This document shows positions 10,824-53,041 of a stretch of DNA of 64,000 nt, one piece after another. Made by a program: the position numbers and the translations under genes. The number at the start of each line of letters is the position of its first letter. Within the stretch, counting starts at the first letter, position 1. The stretch is from positions 62,001 to 126,000 of IMG/VR virus record IMGVR_UViG_3300028920_000001. One strand, 5' to 3'. The notes below the pieces were generated by a model. It did no database searches, was not told the origin of the DNA, and saw only the letters and a list, made by a program, of their open reading frames with translations.

Positions 10824-10961
10824 TTATTGGACAATTATTTTCTTGGGTTTATTAACTAGAGAAATTTCTAAGAAATTATAATTGGAAGGGATTGCACTTG
10901 CGGCACATTGATAACAAATATAATAATTCTCTATTGGAATTAAGTCACTTATCAATTTCAT
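10824..10961 (-). CDS. 45-aa protein with KKIIVQ C-terminal tag (below cutoff)
   Basis: hand translation MKLISDLIPIENYYICYQCAASAIPSNYNFLEISLVNKPKKIIVQ*. Confidence 0.55.
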   Translation of the reverse strand: MKLISDLIPIENYYICYQCAASAIPSNYNFLEISLVNKPKKIIVQ

Positions 10962-10999
10962 ATTATTACATAATTTACAAGTGGCTGCCACAATTTGAT

Positions 11000-11218
11000 T
11001 CATTTAGTAATGATCTTTCTAGGCAATATTAATCTAGTTCCCATACTAAATGGGACTTTAGTTCCCATACTAACGTCAGTCTTTAAACCAACGTCAAATT
11101 TCATTTTAGAGTTTATATATTTATGTGTTGCTTGTTTTATACATTCAGCACAAAAACCATCACCATTTGTATTAATCACAAATTCGTTTTGACCATGAAT
11201 TTTGCAAATAAATCTCAT
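11000..11218 (-). CDS. small protein with RKIITK C-terminal tag
   Basis: ends LPRKIITK*. Confidence 0.65.
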   Translation of the reverse strand: MRFICKIHGQNEFVINTNGDGFCAECIKQATHKYINSKMKFDVGLKTDVSMGTKVPFSMGTRLILPRKIITK

Positions 11219-11400
11219 TTAGTAATAATTTTCTTAGGAGGCGGAGAGTTCACTCCCATTACGTCATGAATTGGAGTGAACTTTAATGGCTTGATACTAT
11301 AACCATACCCATACATTAATGAAAAATTCATGGCTTTAGGATTATAGACTGAATCCGCAAAAGATGACTGAAAGAAATAATTTGGAAGTAATTTTTTCAT
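11215..11400 (-). CDS. small protein with KKIITK C-terminal tag
   Basis: ends PPPKKIITK*; ATGA overlaps on both sides. Confidence 0.65.
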   Translation of the reverse strand: MKKLLPNYFFQSSFADSVYNPKAMNFSLMYGYGYSIKPLKFTPIHDVMGVNSPPPKKIITK

Positions 11401-11564
11401 TTAGTAATAATTTTCTTGGGAAATTCTTTTACAATGAAAATCCTTCTTCCAATACTTTGATAATCCAGATGTTGGCGTAATGGAGATCCCCATGTAGGCC
11501 CAAATTTCACTCTTTTAATGCCTATTTGTGAAACTGTGTCTTTTGTTTGGGATTTGTTAGTCAT
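11397..11564 (-). CDS. 55-aa protein with KKIITK C-terminal tag (below cutoff)
   Basis: hand translation MTNKSQTKDTVSQIGIKRVKFGPTWGSPLRQHLDYQSIGRRIFIVKEFPKKIITK*; ATGA overlaps on both sides. Confidence 0.7.
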   Translation of the reverse strand: MTNKSQTKDTVSQIGIKRVKFGPTWGSPLRQHLDYQSIGRRIFIVKEFPKKIITK

Positions 11565-11911
11565 AAGTTCATGAGTTCTTCTATATAAGCTAAATCAATA
11601 ATGGACTGTACCTCTTCCTGTGGTATTAGCTTTCTCTGAATAATATTCATGATATTTGTTTTCAAATTAATGACTTCATCATTTTCTGAAACAAAGAATT
11701 GATCTTTTTTAATTAAATTTTTGGAACCAGAATCAATGGCATTAATTACCCATCTTAATGATGGACTCCACCGTTGTTTAATGGCTGCATAACATAACTC
11801 TGAACATCGTTCTCGTTCTTGTTTTGTTCCATTATGCTTTCCAACTGTATAAGTGATATAAAAAAGAACAGCAAGAACGATCACGCAGAGAACTATTATC
11901 TCCATATTCAT
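11561..11911 (-). CDS. membrane-anchored hypothetical protein, variant tag (LMNL)
   Basis: N-terminal TM; ends YIEELMNL*. Confidence 0.65.
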   Translation of the reverse strand: MNMEIIVLCVIVLAVLFYITYTVGKHNGTKQERERCSELCYAAIKQRWSPSLRWVINAIDSGSKNLIKKDQFFVSENDEVINLKTNIMNIIQRKLIPQEEVQSIIDLAYIEELMNL

Positions 11912-12099
11912 GATTCCATTACTTTTTTGACCAATTTAGATGCATGTCTTTCTTTTCGAAATCTTTTACACCACAACCAATATCCAATTTTAGGTAATCG
12001 TTCCCACCATGGGATCCATTTATTACAGACGTACACAGTATAAAAACATTTGCGCCAATAAAGCCAATCAGCGCGTGACATTGGTGTTGGTTTTATCAC
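11908..12099 (-). CDS. hypothetical protein with C-terminal VMES tag
   Basis: ends LVKKVMES*. Confidence 0.65.
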   Translation of the reverse strand: MIKPTPMSRADWLYWRKCFYTVYVCNKWIPWWERLPKIGYWLWCKRFRKERHASKLVKKVMES

Positions 12100-12359
12100 T
12101 TGTGTTTTACAATTGGAAATTTATAATCATCAATACCACCTCGCTGGGCCACCGCTTCTACCACGGGTCGTATTACTTCCAACGAGGCTTCTCGAAGAGT
12201 ATTGGCTCTATCTTTTGTAAGGTTCCTTTCTTGTCTTGCGTATTTTTGACTAATTTCTTCATCACTTAAAGCAATAATAGCTTTTGCACCTATTAAGAGT
12301 GCGTCAACTACTATATGATCAGAAATTACTTGATCAGCTTTCTTGGACATTGTCTTCAT
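12096..12359 (-). CDS. hypothetical protein
   Basis: coupled ORF in ATGA chain. Confidence 0.6.
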   Translation of the reverse strand: MKTMSKKADQVISDHIVVDALLIGAKAIIALSDEEISQKYARQERNLTKDRANTLREASLEVIRPVVEAVAQRGGIDDYKFPIVKHK

Positions 12360-12688
12360 GAATTCATAACAGAACGAACTTTATGTAAATCTAGGAAAGT
12401 GCTTAATTCATCAAGCAAATCACCACAGGCTGCTTCTGCTAATTGTACTGCTTGTTCAGGATTTTCAGCATTACCCCATTTAATAGGTCTGTTTTCTCCT
12501 ATATTACAAACATTCCATTTAGTACCTGCTGCTATATTAGAGGTAATATTAATTCGGAATGGATACTGTTCAGCTCTCCATTCATCCATATTTAATCCGG
12601 ATGGACTAAATTGTAAACCACCTGTAAGCCCAATTCCCTCAATTTCTTGACCAAAGATAATTAGTTTTTGACTAGCTTTGTTTAACAT
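12356..12688 (-). CDS. hypothetical protein with C-terminal VMNS tag
   Basis: ends KVRSVMNS*. Confidence 0.7.
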   Translation of the reverse strand: MLNKASQKLIIFGQEIEGIGLTGGLQFSPSGLNMDEWRAEQYPFRINITSNIAAGTKWNVCNIGENRPIKWGNAENPEQAVQLAEAACGDLLDELSTFLDLHKVRSVMNS

Positions 12689-13007
12689 TTAAGTCCTCCT
12701 GCCAAACTTCAACTTGGTCTAAATCGATCCAAGTGCTAATTTCATTATAATTTGCTTTAAAACCGTAGAGATTATATTTAACTGAATAAGTATGTCCCAT
12801 ATCACCAACAGTTGCATGTTCTTCTTTAGAAACAATAGATACACAACTTTCTTTTCCAGACGGGAAACGGATAGTAATTTTATTTAGATTTTCGAAATTT
12901 ATACCATTTTTAATGGAAGCAAAACCACCTGGAGTTAAACGCTTACCTGGAAGAGCATAATATACCCTTCCCCAATCATTTCCTTTTTCTAATTTTACCC
13001 ATGACAT
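12672..13007 (-). CDS. hypothetical protein
   Basis: 111-aa ORF, TGTAATCT motif 6 nt upstream. Confidence 0.6.
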   Translation of the reverse strand: MSWVKLEKGNDWGRVYYALPGKRLTPGGFASIKNGINFENLNKITIRFPSGKESCVSIVSKEEHATVGDMGHTYSVKYNLYGFKANYNEISTWIDLDQVEVWQEDLNVKQS

Positions 13008-51433: not shown

Positions 51434-51443
51434 ATCTTAAATC

Positions 51444-51734
51444 CTAAATATCATGAACTTCGTACACGAAAATTTTAGTCAAAAATTCTTCTTCTGATTC
51501 AGCAAAGAAGAACCAATCATAATCAGAATCAGAATCTATATCATCATTATATAATTGTCTATCACGTTTATACTGAAAGATTTTCATTCCATCCCCATAT
51601 TTCTCGAGTTTAGCTTGAGCTAAAGAATTGGAAACTGTAGTCCCTTGATAGACATCAGAAATAGATCTAAGATCATCTAAATTCATCTTATCGAGAACCA
51701 ATACAGCTTCCCATGGACAGGCATCGATCCTCAT
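51444..51734 (-). CDS. hypothetical protein with variant tag (VHDI)
   Basis: ends FVYEVHDI*. Confidence 0.6.
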   Translation of the reverse strand: MRIDACPWEAVLVLDKMNLDDLRSISDVYQGTTVSNSLAQAKLEKYGDGMKIFQYKRDRQLYNDDIDSDSDYDWFFFAESEEEFLTKIFVYEVHDI

Positions 51735-51961
51735 GGATTATCTTTCTTAGTCACGACTTCTACAATTCTTCTTAGTAAATTCTGTTCTTTTAAGTATACT
51801 AATAAATGTTGAAGCTCCCATGGTTCAAGTTTAGTCAAACCAACTTCTTTAATTCGACGTTTGAAATAATCTCGAGTACTTTCCATGGTTATTTGAGTAA
51901 ATCTAGAATCTTGGTCAGTATATCTTTTTATACCTCCTATAACGGATATTATAGATCTCAC
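51731..51961 (-). CDS. hypothetical protein
   Basis: 76-aa ORF. Confidence 0.5.
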   Translation of the reverse strand: MRSIISVIGGIKRYTDQDSRFTQITMESTRDYFKRRIKEVGLTKLEPWELQHLLVYLKEQNLLRRIVEVVTKKDNP

Positions 51962-52136
51962 TCTTAAGATTTTGTTTCGCTATTATCTGATTCATATAAT
52001 CATTACTAGTATTAAGTGAAGGCTCTACTCTTCCTACTCGACGCATGCAACGAACGGCATTCATAAGTTCCTCAGCGTCATCTTCACGCATCGGTTCTTC
52101 TAAAATAACCGTAAACCCTTTGATTCGGTCTGTCAT
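51915..52136 (-). CDS. hypothetical protein
   Basis: MTDRIKGFTVILEEPMREDDAE. Confidence 0.6.
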   Translation of the reverse strand: MTDRIKGFTVILEEPMREDDAEELMNAVRCMRRVGRVEPSLNTSNDYMNQIIAKQNLKSEIYNIRYRRYKKIY

Positions 52137-52369
52137 GATTCCATCACCTGATATACATAAATTACATCCAAAATTTCTTGTTCATTTCTACGTTTCACCA
52201 TTTCTTTGGAAAAATGGAGTGTATGAGTTTCTCCCATCTTATTCCCAAAAGTAATAAGATAAAATGAGTTACCGGTCCCATCATGCTCAAATCCCATTGA
52301 TAAATATTTAATTCCATTCCTGTCTGCGACATCTTTAATCCATCGCCAATTTTTAGGTCCGTTATACAT
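52133..52369 (-). CDS. hypothetical protein with C-terminal VMES tag
   Basis: ends YVYQVMES*. Confidence 0.7.
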   Translation of the reverse strand: MYNGPKNWRWIKDVADRNGIKYLSMGFEHDGTGNSFYLITFGNKMGETHTLHFSKEMVKRRNEQEILDVIYVYQVMES

Positions 52370-52387
52370 TAATAACTCTAGAGCAAT

Positions 52388-52463
52388 TGGTACGGGGCGT
52401 GAGGATCGAACTCACCTTGTTCTCCTTGTAAAAGAGATGCCATCACCAGACGACTCGCCCCGC
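52388..52463 (-). tRNA. tRNA-Val(UAC)
   Basis: loop UU-UAC-AA, CCA encoded. Confidence 0.88.
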
Positions 52464-52693
52464 TCTCTACTTGGTTGAATTACGCCCCCTAAGATTCCTG
52501 GTTAGTTTCTCTTAAATCTTTAAGTTTTGCTTTAATCTCGGTAATCCAACCACAACATTTTATACATACATGATCTTTATGTACAATTCCTTCCCTGTTC
52601 GGTGGTCCGAAAAATAATCCACCTGGTTCCATCAACTCCTTTCCACAGAAATCACAGACCACTTGAATCATAATCAATTGTACAATTATCTTA

Positions 52694-53041
52694 ATGTTGG
52701 AAGAAATCAAAGCTCAGATGGCAACTGTTTCTTCTCGAGAGAAAAGATTAGATATTATTTATGATGTGATCGATGACGCATTGATAGCAGGTAAGTTTAA
52801 TGAAATTAACCAAATGTTTACAGAAATCAAATGTGAGGAATTTGAAGCAACTGAATTGTTAGGATTTCTAACCATCACTTTAATGGCTCATGGCCAATTA
52901 TCCAATCGTGGATGGTTCTATGATCAATGCAAAATTGAATTATTAAAAAGTCGTCCATTAACAGAAGTTAATAAAATGACAAGTGGCTTGGCATTTCCTT
53001 ATCAAGCCCAAACTCAAGCCAAGAAAATTGTTACTAAATAG
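52694..53041 (+). CDS. hypothetical protein with KKIVTK C-terminal tag
   Basis: ends TQAKKIVTK*. Confidence 0.7.
   Translation: MLEEIKAQMATVSSREKRLDIIYDVIDDALIAGKFNEINQMFTEIKCEEFEATELLGFLTITLMAHGQLSNRGWFYDQCKIELLKSRPLTEVNKMTSGLAFPYQAQTQAKKIVTK

What the first reader, a model, noticed from the sequence alone, without database searches (positions are those of the whole stretch)
10824..53041. Second C-terminal tag: (P/A/T)-[KR]-K-I-[IFV]-T-[KR]-stop on eight small proteins
Seen at 10824 (KKIIVQ), 11000 (RKIITK), 11215, 11397 and 13023 (KKIITK), 14631 (KKIFTK), 15462 (KKIITR) and 52694 (KKIVTK). Two of these ORFs are below the ORF-track cutoff. Bodies are unrelated, and the tag is never combined with the IMES tag. 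Seven of eight cluster in 10.8-15.7 kb, so local duplication of a DNA tail (AAGAAAATTATTACTAAATGA) is possible, but synonymous variants (AAG ATC, ATC ACG AGA, ATT GTT) and the distant 52694 copy argue for a peptide function. Inference: a second address code with a different receptor (basic then beta-strand-like, as in beta-augmentation ligands).
Basis: partly seen in the sequence, partly recalled or inferred. Interest (0 to 1): 0.68.

Follow-up and report, generated by a model that had tools for sequence, protein, structure and literature searches.

The report
Capsid-tail-like tag on small phage proteins
Fourteen small proteins of a 427-kb sediment megaphage end in the same six residues, which match the last beta-strand of the phage's own major capsid protein; selection keeps the tail as a peptide, but what reads it is unknown.

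Summary
The window is part of a 426,960-bp phage-G-like megaphage. The motif [KR]-K-I-[IFV]-[TV]-[KRQ] occurs 8 times in the six-frame translation of the window, and every copy is followed directly by a stop. A ninth copy lies in a 28-codon ORF at 55066-55152. Five more lie elsewhere in the genome, giving 14 in total.

The core is [KR]-x-I-hydrophobic-T-[KR]-COOH. It is selected as a peptide:
- Variation sits at third codon positions.
- A t52694 orthologue at dS about 1.1 (66% identity) ends RRIVTK, and a 47%-identical homologue of t13023 ends RTIYTK.
- Only 5 of 13 tails overlap a downstream start.

New finding: the major capsid protein (homologue of phage G gp27) ends R-L-I-V-T-R-COOH, the same core motif. 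That tail is conserved in about 75 clade relatives. Two tag2 proteins are built from N-terminal pieces of the capsid protein.

Four other complete relatives have the capsid tail but no tag2 small proteins, so tag2 is a young, lineage-restricted expansion.

Best reading: a captured or mimicked capsid C-terminal strand, spread among small accessory genes and kept as a docking peptide. The partner is untested. "Second address code" is only partly supported.

The parts
10824..11003 (-). tag2 ORF, 59 aa, CxxC...CxxC zinc-ribbon body. Tail PKKIIVQ at 10827-10844 is the most deviant copy.
11000..11218 (-). tag2 ORF, 72 aa, zinc-ribbon family A, tail PRKIITK. Its stop overlaps the next start (ATGA).
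11215..11400 (-). tag2 ORF, 61 aa, singleton body, tail PKKIITK.
11397..11564 (-). tag2 ORF, 55 aa, tail PKKIITK. Residues 18-51 are homologous to capsid protein residues 29-62 (a 'mini-capsid-N' protein).
   Evidence: (hhalign E 5.8e-6)
13023..13223 (-). tag2 ORF, 66 aa, acidic helical body, tail AKKIITK. A 97% orthologue keeps the tail; a 47% homologue ends ARTIYTK.
14631..14858 (-). tag2 ORF, 75 aa, tail TKKIFTK. Last gene before the tmRNA. The 89% and 82% orthologues keep PKKIFTK.
15462..15653 (-). tag2 ORF, 63 aa, tail PKKIITR. Residues 17-58 are homologous to capsid protein residues 31-72.
   Evidence: (hhalign E 7.5e-7)
52694..53041 (+). tag2 ORF, 115 aa, tail AKKIVTK at 53021-53038. 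Orthologues of 91, 84 and 66% identity end KKIITK, KQIITK and RRIVTK.
55066..55152 (-). Probable ninth in-window copy: 28-codon ORF with a minimal C-x2-H...C-x2-C zinc ribbon and tail KRRIITR, written with different codons (AGA CGA ATA ATC ACA CGA).
47873..48397 (+). 174-aa internally shortened paralogue of the major capsid protein. It keeps the N-part and the C-terminal strand as its own C-terminus (...AIVKVVIN), so it is a natural intermediate for capture of the capsid 3' end.
   Evidence: (hhalign E 8.6e-5)

Best explanation
Tag2 is a genome-encoded C-terminal hexapeptide module, [KR]-x-I-hydrophobic-T-[KR]-COOH, usually P-K-K-I-I-T-K. Fourteen small accessory proteins (28-115 aa) of one sub-lineage of phage-G-like megaphages carry it.

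It has the same form as the C-terminal beta-strand of the phage's own HK97-fold major capsid protein, R-L-I-[VI]-T-R-COOH.

Inferred origin: small genes in the accessory region captured the 3' end of the capsid gene. This genome repeatedly builds small ORFs from capsid-gene pieces. The tail then spread by tandem duplication and recombination onto at least nine body types.

Shown: the tail is kept by purifying selection at the peptide level.

Inferred function: a free C-terminal strand, set off from the body by a proline, docks by beta-strand addition on a partner that also handles the capsid protein's C-terminal strand. The likeliest partner is the capsid protein A-domain or a capsid-assembly intermediate, which would tie these small proteins to capsid protein or its assembly.

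My estimates for each layer: real peptide-level module, about 0.9; related to the capsid tail by descent or mimicry, about 0.65; docks on the capsid protein itself, about 0.25. The confidence given for this explanation (0.4) is for the statement taken as a whole.
For: Specific to C-termini:
- 8 of 8 motif matches in the window precede a stop.
- 12 ORF ends versus at most 1 of 301,256 internal 7-mers reach the PSSM score.
- The core regex has 11 terminal matches and 1 internal match in 130,292 positions.

Peptide-level selection:
- Third-position excess of 25 of 41 variants, P = 2.6e-4.
- The t52694 orthologue at dS 1.12 ends RRIVTK, with 7 of 18 tail nucleotides changed.
- The 47% homologue of t13023 ends ARTIYTK.
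- dN/dS is 0.2-0.6.

Capsid link:
- The capsid protein (PDB 6WKK gp27, E 1.4e-56; PHROG 2522, E 1e-43) ends RLIVTR.
- It is the only other terminal match to the core regex in G000, and the only one in G003.
- 75 clade capsid tails read RLIVTR, RLIITR and close variants, in about 50 DNA spellings.
- The tail is predicted as a strand, with pLDDT about 75.
- t15462 and t11397 align to capsid residues 31-72 and 29-62.
- A 174-aa paralogue keeps the capsid C-terminal strand as its own end.
- The capsid protein is the most frequent donor of pieces to small ORFs.

Derived state: four other complete relatives have the capsid tail but no tag2 small proteins.
Against: - There is no DNA similarity between the capsid tail (CGC CTC ATT GTG ACG CGG) and tag2 tails. 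Descent, if real, is old or runs through lost intermediates.
- Position -5 is Leu in the capsid protein but Lys, Gln, Pro or Thr in tag2.
- The regex was defined after seeing the variants.
- Capsid pieces also occur in tag1 (IMES) proteins, so carrying capsid pieces is not unique to tag2.
- A G003 mini-capsid-N protein carries tag1, not tag2.
- An N-terminal motif on proteins encoded next to the capsid gene is a better candidate for capsid targeting proper.
- The one co-folding test (capsid protein + t13023) gave no answer.
- No partner has been shown.
Confidence: 0.4

Rival explanations
1. Tag2 is an independent C-terminal address or degron tag, and its likeness to the capsid tail is coincidental. 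A host or phage reader binds it. One candidate is ClpX, recognising a MuA-like 'C-motif 2' (dibasic then hydrophobic, C-terminal) to time removal or remodelling of early small proteins.
For: The tail is C-terminal, has a KK or RK pair followed by hydrophobic residues, and is set off by a proline. The MuA degron used for C-motif 2 is ...NRRKKAI (PMC12723719). The phage carries its own tmRNA with a proteobacterial-looking tag, ANDNASLAIAA, so proteolytic tagging matters in this system. Tags appear swappable between homologous bodies.
Against: Tag2 ends in Thr-Lys/Arg, not in small apolar residues as in MuA. The abundant capsid protein carries the same motif. No ClpP is encoded by the phage. No reader candidate was found next to the cluster.
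Confidence: 0.22
2. Self-association: the tails pair with each other as short beta-zippers, joining tag2 proteins into homo- or hetero-oligomers, with no separate receptor.
For: The tail is a short beta-prone I-[IV]-T core flanked by charges, at a free terminus. Several tag2 genes are co-transcribed in tandem with 4-nt overlaps.
Against: Six residues with like charges at both ends make a poor zipper. This does not explain the likeness to the capsid tail. Nothing was tested here.
Confidence: 0.08
3. Evolutionary relic: the tail is left over from tandem duplication of one or two ancestral small genes, or of a capsid fragment, and has no function of its own.
For: Seven of the 14 copies lie within 5 kb. 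Five bodies form one zinc-ribbon family and two form another. Two tails are identical in DNA.
Against: Bodies have diverged beyond detection while the tail is kept. Variation is mostly synonymous. Orthologues keep the tail at dS 1.1 and at 47% identity. Copies sit at seven separate places across 170 kb.
Confidence: 0.07
4. Nucleic-acid element: the 18-21 nt act as RNA or DNA, for example as a translational-coupling or initiation region for the next gene, a terminator, a recombination site or a homing site.
For: Five tails overlap the downstream start (ATGA or TAATG). An HNH endonuclease gene lies next to the cluster.
Against: Four tails are followed by an opposite-strand gene and one by the tmRNA region, and three or four more have gaps of 15-251 nt. 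All DNA matches with up to 2 mismatches are in-frame tails, and none is intergenic or out of frame. Conservation follows codons, not bases. Flanks are not conserved.
Confidence: 0.03

Closest known systems
C-terminal beta-strand of HK97-fold major capsid proteins (phage G gp27, PDB 6WKK, and this clade's capsid protein)
   Same: Same position (extreme C-terminus), same length, and same pattern of basic - x - Ile - Ile/Val - Thr - basic. The strand is encoded in the same genome, and two tag2 proteins are homologous to other parts of the same protein.
   Different: Tag2 sits on 28-115 aa proteins that lack the capsid A-domain. Position -5 differs (Lys versus Leu). There is no DNA-level similarity. 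Phage G gp27 itself is three residues shorter at this end.
Encapsulin cargo-loading peptides
   Same: A short C-terminal peptide shared by unrelated cargo proteins, read by an HK97-fold shell protein. This is the nearest functional analogy if the capsid protein is the partner.
   Different: The sequence is different (the glycine/serine/leucine-rich consensus is from my own knowledge). Cargo genes flank the shell gene, whereas tag2 genes lie 60-230 kb from the capsid gene. Binding was not tested.
ClpX C-motif-2 degron (MuA ...RRKKAI)
   Same: A C-terminal dibasic pair followed by hydrophobic residues, carried by a phage protein (PMC12723719).
   Different: Tag2 has two further residues and ends in Lys or Arg. 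No evidence of proteolysis.
Tag1 of the same phage (x-E-x-hydrophobic-V-x-x-[IV]-M-[END]-S-COOH on about 145 proteins)
   Same: A C-terminal tag on small ORFan proteins of the same genome region, selected as a peptide and interspersed in the same operons. Both tags occur on capsid-fragment bodies.
   Different: Tag1 is helical, amphipathic and acidic. It is conserved across the clade, including G003. Tag2 is strand-like, basic and confined to one sub-lineage.
PeSL-type mobile regulatory cassettes of T4-like phages (from my own knowledge)
   Same: Repeated short sequences bounding small novel ORFs in hyperplastic phage regions.
   Different: Those are non-coding promoter and stem-loop DNA repeats. 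Here the repeat is coding, confined to six or seven codons, and conserved as peptide.

Membership tests
HK97-fold capsid protein C-terminal strand (this clade) | Ends R-[LI]-[IVL]-[VI]-[TQSA]-R-COOH | tested here: met
   Tag2 tails match the basic, Ile, Ile/Val, Thr and basic positions. The core regex is shared by 10 tag2 proteins and the capsid protein, and has only 1 internal match in 130,292 positions.
HK97-fold capsid protein C-terminal strand (this clade) | Homology by descent of the tail DNA | tested here: inconclusive
   No nucleotide similarity beyond what the peptide imposes. Support is indirect: capsid N-fragments in t11397 and t15462, and a 174-aa paralogue that keeps the strand at its end.
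ClpX C-motif-2 degron | Dibasic pair near the C-terminus | tested here: met
   KK, RK or RR at positions -6/-5 in 11 of 14 copies.
ClpX C-motif-2 degron | Small apolar residues at the extreme C-terminus (MuA ...KKAI) | tested here: not met
   Tails end T-K or T-R, and V-Q once. MuA sequence from PMC12723719.
ClpX C-motif-2 degron | ClpX-dependent degradation or remodelling | not testable with these tools
   Needs biochemistry in the unknown host.
Encapsulin-type cargo-loading peptide | C-terminal peptide shared by unrelated proteins | tested here: met
   At least nine body types share the tail.
Encapsulin-type cargo-loading peptide | Binds the HK97-fold shell protein | tested here: inconclusive
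   The co-folding job for capsid protein + t13023 gave no answer.
PDZ-type C-terminal ligand | Hydrophobic residue at the last position | tested here: not met
   The last residue is Lys, Arg or Gln in all copies.
tmRNA (ssrA) tag | Added co-translationally from tmRNA and ends in Ala-Ala | tested here: not met
   Tails are encoded in each gene. The phage tmRNA tag is ANDNASLAIAA.
Translational-coupling or initiation element | Always lies directly upstream of, or overlaps, a downstream start | tested here: not met
   Only 5 of 13 overlap a start, and 4-5 end a transcription unit.
DNA repeat or mobile cassette boundary | Conservation at base level that extends into flanks and is independent of frame | tested here: not met
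   Flanks are unrelated. Variation is at third positions. All close DNA matches are in frame and terminal.

The most novel reading that the evidence does not exclude
The small-gene region of this megaphage clade encodes a repertoire of 'capsid mimics'. These are tagged mini-proteins that display pieces of the major capsid protein. Tag2 is the displayed C-terminal strand, expanded to 14 genes in one lineage. They would act on whatever binds the capsid protein: tuning or poisoning capsid assembly (the phage's own or that of co-infecting relatives), or decoying host immune sensors that recognise capsid protein.
Probability: 0.18. Interest if true: 0.85.

Novelty: new variant of a known kind. Interest (0 to 1): 0.62.

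Why it matters
Shared C-terminal peptides on unrelated proteins are how cells and protein shells address cargo; examples are PTS1, ssrA and the encapsulin loading peptides. I found no description of such tags in phage proteomes.

In this phage, about a fifth of the genes carry one tag (IMES) and 14 carry a second. The second has the form of the capsid protein's own last strand. If the tail docks on capsid protein or on something that binds it, that would give a handle on the function of a block of otherwise opaque ORFans. It would also give an example of how megaphages build new genes from pieces of core genes, and a short natural peptide for attaching cargo to an HK97-fold capsid.

Either way, the tail is a simple, testable marker: swap it, delete it, or pull down with it.

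Tried and rejected
- Pfam and PHROGs on all tag2 proteins returned nothing above cut-off. The only hint was a sub-threshold DnaJ CxxCxGxG match for the ORF at genome 231238.
- Pfam on the ten largest tag1 proteins and on seven neighbours of the cluster returned nothing except the HNH endonuclease.
- A degenerate DNA pattern scan of IMG/VR was too unspecific. Two large contigs it hit were unrelated.
- A megablast of the region against GenBank phages found no match.
- The search for related loci with a neighbouring 272-aa protein and with the t52694 alignment found no relatives in IMG/VR.
- The word search for the ORF at genome 135468 found only the protein itself.
- The co-folding job for capsid protein + t13023 gave no answer (score 0.00). 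It counts neither for nor against binding.
- The AlphaFold2 model of the capsid protein, built from a 20-sequence alignment, was poor (mean pLDDT 47). I used only its secondary structure at the tail and ran no fold search on it.
- The ESM Atlas look-alikes for t52694 were at noise level, 0.82.
- No ClpP is encoded in the phage.
- I considered the capsid E-loop segment PRRVIF as an alternative source of the tail. I rejected it by eye because it is a much poorer match than the C-terminal strand; I did not score it.

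
Full report
**What the window is.** The window is bases 62001-126000 of a 426,960-bp IMG/VR virus record with direct terminal repeats and 40% G+C. It carries a tmRNA (13832-14185, minus strand) and about 26 tRNA genes. The portal protein is recognisable. The major capsid protein (MCP; genome 304457-305350, 297 aa) matches PDB 6WKK, the gp27 capsid protein of Bacillus phage G, at E = 1.4e-56, and PHROG 2522 'major head protein' at E = 1e-43. 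So this is a phage-G-like megaphage. The DNA is held by a marine sediment metagenome, and partial matches come from hot-spring metagenomes. Genes of 60-260 kb are mostly small ORFans; large structural genes fill the rest.

**Checking the observation.** All eight tails are present. One coordinate needs correcting: 52694 is the start of a plus-strand ORF (52694-53041), and its tail lies at 53021-53038. The pattern [KR]KI[IFVL][TVS][KRQ] matches eight times in the six-frame translation of the window, and every match is followed directly by a stop codon. A ninth copy is a 28-codon ORF at 55066-55152 (minus strand). It is a minimal zinc ribbon ending KRRIITR.

**Genome-wide extension.** Five more copies lie outside the window, at genome 135468-135662, 135659-135841, 194112-194303, 231238-231417 and 241338-241592. 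A position-specific matrix made from the tails scores 12 ORF ends at 13.3 bits or more, out of 3,844 ends. At most one of 301,256 internal 7-mers scores as high. The motif is therefore real, specific to C-termini, and not confined to one cluster.

**Peptide, not nucleic acid.**
- Conservation begins at the codon for the residue before the first Lys, often Pro. It ends at the stop, and the flanks are unrelated.
- Across 13 copies, minor-allele counts in the six core codons are 9, 7 and 25 at codon positions 1, 2 and 3. The binomial P for 25 or more of 41 at third positions is 2.6e-4.
- Replacements are conservative: K/R, I/V/F/M.
- All DNA matches to the consensus 18-mer with up to two mismatches are in-frame tails. 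None is intergenic or in another frame.
- Only five of 13 tails overlap a downstream start. Four are followed by an opposite-strand gene and one by the tmRNA region.

This rules out a coupling, terminator or repeat element.

**Orthologues.**
- The 115-aa protein at 52694 has orthologues of 91, 84 and 66% identity. Their tails are KKIITK, KQIITK and RRIVTK.
- Against the 66% orthologue, dS is 1.12 and dN/dS is 0.20. Seven of the 18 tail nucleotides differ, yet the peptide class is kept.
- A 3.4-kb metagenome contig (L193, about 92% identity) is syntenic. It keeps the tails of the 15462, 14631 and 13023 genes, with dN/dS of 0.25-0.6.
- The 14631 protein's 89% and 82% orthologues keep the Phe variant, KKIFTK.
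- A full HMMER scan of 1.84 billion representatives found a 47%-identical homologue of the 13023 protein. It sits in a syntenic contig (L206), and its tail is ARTIYTK.

The selected core is therefore [KR]-x-I-hydrophobic-T-[KR]-COOH.

**Phyletic range.** Portal and capsid searches found many relatives in IMG/VR. I fetched one complete relative, G003 (393 kb, 50% G+C, portal 72% and capsid 90% identical), and translated it. It carries the IMES tag on dozens of genes. Its only tag2-like C-terminus is its capsid protein. DNA patterns covering K/R-type tails gave 16 hits in this genome. In four complete relatives they hit only the capsid tail or nothing, and narrower Lys/Arg-type patterns found no tag2-type tail in eleven further relatives, most of them partial records. 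Tag2 small proteins are thus a derived feature of one sub-lineage. That sub-lineage comprises this phage, strain-level contigs, and the more distant phage in runs SRR34261224 and SRR34261225.

**The bodies.** 'Unrelated bodies' is only partly right.
- Five copies share a C-x2-H/C ... C-x2-C zinc ribbon: 10824, 11000, 55066 and genome 135468 and 135659.
- One is a DnaJ-type CxxCxGxG mini-protein, below the Pfam cut-off.
- One is Cys/His-rich.
- Two, 11397 and 15462, are homologous to each other and to the N-terminal part of the capsid protein. hhalign against a 20-sequence capsid alignment gives E = 5.8e-6 (residues 18-51 to capsid 29-62) and E = 7.5e-7 (17-58 to 31-72). hmmsearch gives 6.4e-5 and 4.5e-5.
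- The rest are singletons with no family match.

At least nine body types carry the tail.

**The capsid link.** Following the body homology led to the capsid protein, which ends ...NPRGLVRLIVTR. This is the tag2 core motif. With the regex [KR].I[IVFYHML]T[KR], this genome has 11 terminal matches, ten tag2 proteins plus the capsid protein. There is one internal match in 130,292 positions. G003 has one terminal match, its capsid protein, and one internal match in 120,312 positions. Across 75 capsid homologues the tail reads RLIVTR (about 40), RLIITR (10), RLIVQR (9) and close variants. These are written in about 50 different DNA spellings, so it is itself under strong peptide-level constraint. 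The AlphaFold2 model of the capsid protein was poor overall (mean pLDDT 47). It does place residues 290-296 in a beta-strand, with pLDDT about 75, similar to the A-domain elements. That agrees with what is known of the HK97 fold (my own knowledge). The regex was written after seeing the variants, so the nominal chance of about 1e-5 per protein should be discounted. Even so, the coincidence with the one protein that also donates body pieces is hard to dismiss.

**Capsid pieces are a theme.** A capsid profile searched against every ORF of both genomes finds capsid segments in many small ORFs:
- The two tag2 proteins above.
- A 174-aa paralogue in the window (47873-48397). It keeps the N-part and the C-terminal strand as its own C-terminus...AIVKVVIN.
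- Genome 316894-317256, which ends in a capsid C-terminal piece.
- Several IMES-tagged proteins: genome 238529, 138870 and 313419, and G003 54172 and 94901.

Among 136 large proteins, the capsid protein is the most frequent donor of pieces to small ORFs, although it makes up 0.4% of their residues. A G003 mini-capsid-N protein carries the IMES tail, whereas the two in this genome carry tag2. So the two tags behave as interchangeable 3' modules.

**Most likely mechanism.** Three things are shown: a C-terminal hexapeptide module, peptide-level purifying selection, and restriction to one lineage. The rest is inferred. The module is the capsid protein's C-terminal strand, captured with the 3' end of a capsid gene copy, or it has converged on that strand. 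The 174-aa paralogue and the 120-aa ORF show such captures happen. It then spread by tandem duplication (four adjacent genes with ATGA overlaps at 10824-11564) and by recombination. A free strand after a proline cannot be part of a small helical or zinc-ribbon fold. The simplest use is strand addition to a partner, and the partner most compatible with the sequence is whatever accommodates the capsid strand. I put about 0.65 on the capsid relationship and about 0.25 on docking to the capsid protein itself.

**Against capsid targeting proper.** A separate N-terminal motif, M-[ND]-[LF]-x-[KR]-I-A-x-R-[IV]-A, marks at least ten proteins. Most are encoded just after the capsid gene, and the motif looks like the real head-targeting or propeptide signal.

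**Rivals.**
- A ClpX C-motif-2-like degron (MuA ...RRKKAI; PMC12723719) shares the dibasic-hydrophobic pattern. It fails on the basic last residue, and on the fact that the capsid protein carries the motif.
- Self-pairing of tails is possible but untested.
- A functionless relic and a nucleic-acid element are contradicted by the selection and position data above.

**Novelty.** Searches of the paper library found no description of shared C-terminal tags in phage or megaphage proteomes. The recent phage G genome paper mentions none. The kind of thing is known: a short C-terminal linear motif shared by unrelated proteins. The setting, the likeness to the capsid tail and the capsid-fragment mosaicism appear new.

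**Limits.**
- No experiment, expression data or structure of a complex was available.
- The gene list is a crude longest-ORF call.
- The paralogous tails are not independent samples.
- The relatives that share tag2 are known only from short contigs.

Noticed in passing
whole genome; in the window e.g. 12356-12688(-), 13220-13564(-), 13539-13787(-): Tag1: about 145 of about 700 crude genes end x-E-x-hydrophobic-V-x-x-[IV]-M-[ENDQK]-S-COOH, with Ser written both TCN and AGY. The 50%-G+C relative G003 has it too. Only 6 of 149 tagged genes have a G003 homologue, and 5 of those keep the tag. The ten largest tagged proteins have no Pfam match.
   Followed up: partly
genome 306299-308591 (outside the window); also 106369 (window 44369-44914, +), 286060, 311828, 317243: A third, N-terminal motif, M-[ND]-[LF]-x-[KR]-I-A-x-R-[IV]-A, on at least 10 proteins. 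Six are in a row just downstream of the capsid gene. At least 4 proteins in G003 have it. It may be a capsid-targeting sequence or propeptide.
   Followed up: partly
window 47873-48397(+); genome 238529-238918, 138870-139391, 313419-313625, 316894-317256; G003 54172-54867, 94901-95200: Small ORFs built from different segments of the major capsid protein, most carrying tag1 or tag2. The capsid protein is the most frequent donor among large proteins.
   Followed up: partly
window 18541-18615(-): A tRNA with anticodon TCA (called tRNA-SeC by ARAGORN), which may be an opal suppressor. I saw no sign that TGA is recoded: tails end in TGA, TAA and TAG alike.
   Followed up: no
window 33979-34105(-) and 50507-50633(-): Two 127-nt Rfam tRNA matches that ARAGORN did not call. 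They may be intron-containing or otherwise interrupted tRNA genes.
   Followed up: no
window 59173-59448(+) and 59443-59718(-): Two convergent tag1 genes overlap by six bases. Their tails (VMES on both strands) form a near-perfect palindrome, GTTATGGAGTCATGACTCCATAAC.
   Followed up: no
genome 231238-231417(-), outside the window: This tag2 protein (DnaJ-like zinc finger) also has a tag2-like stretch, RTKKIVPKN, near its N-terminus, in addition to its tail RTKQIVTK.
   Followed up: no
window 13832-14185(-): Phage-encoded tmRNA with tag peptide ANDNASLAIAA, lying between tag2 genes 13023 and 14631.
   Followed up: no
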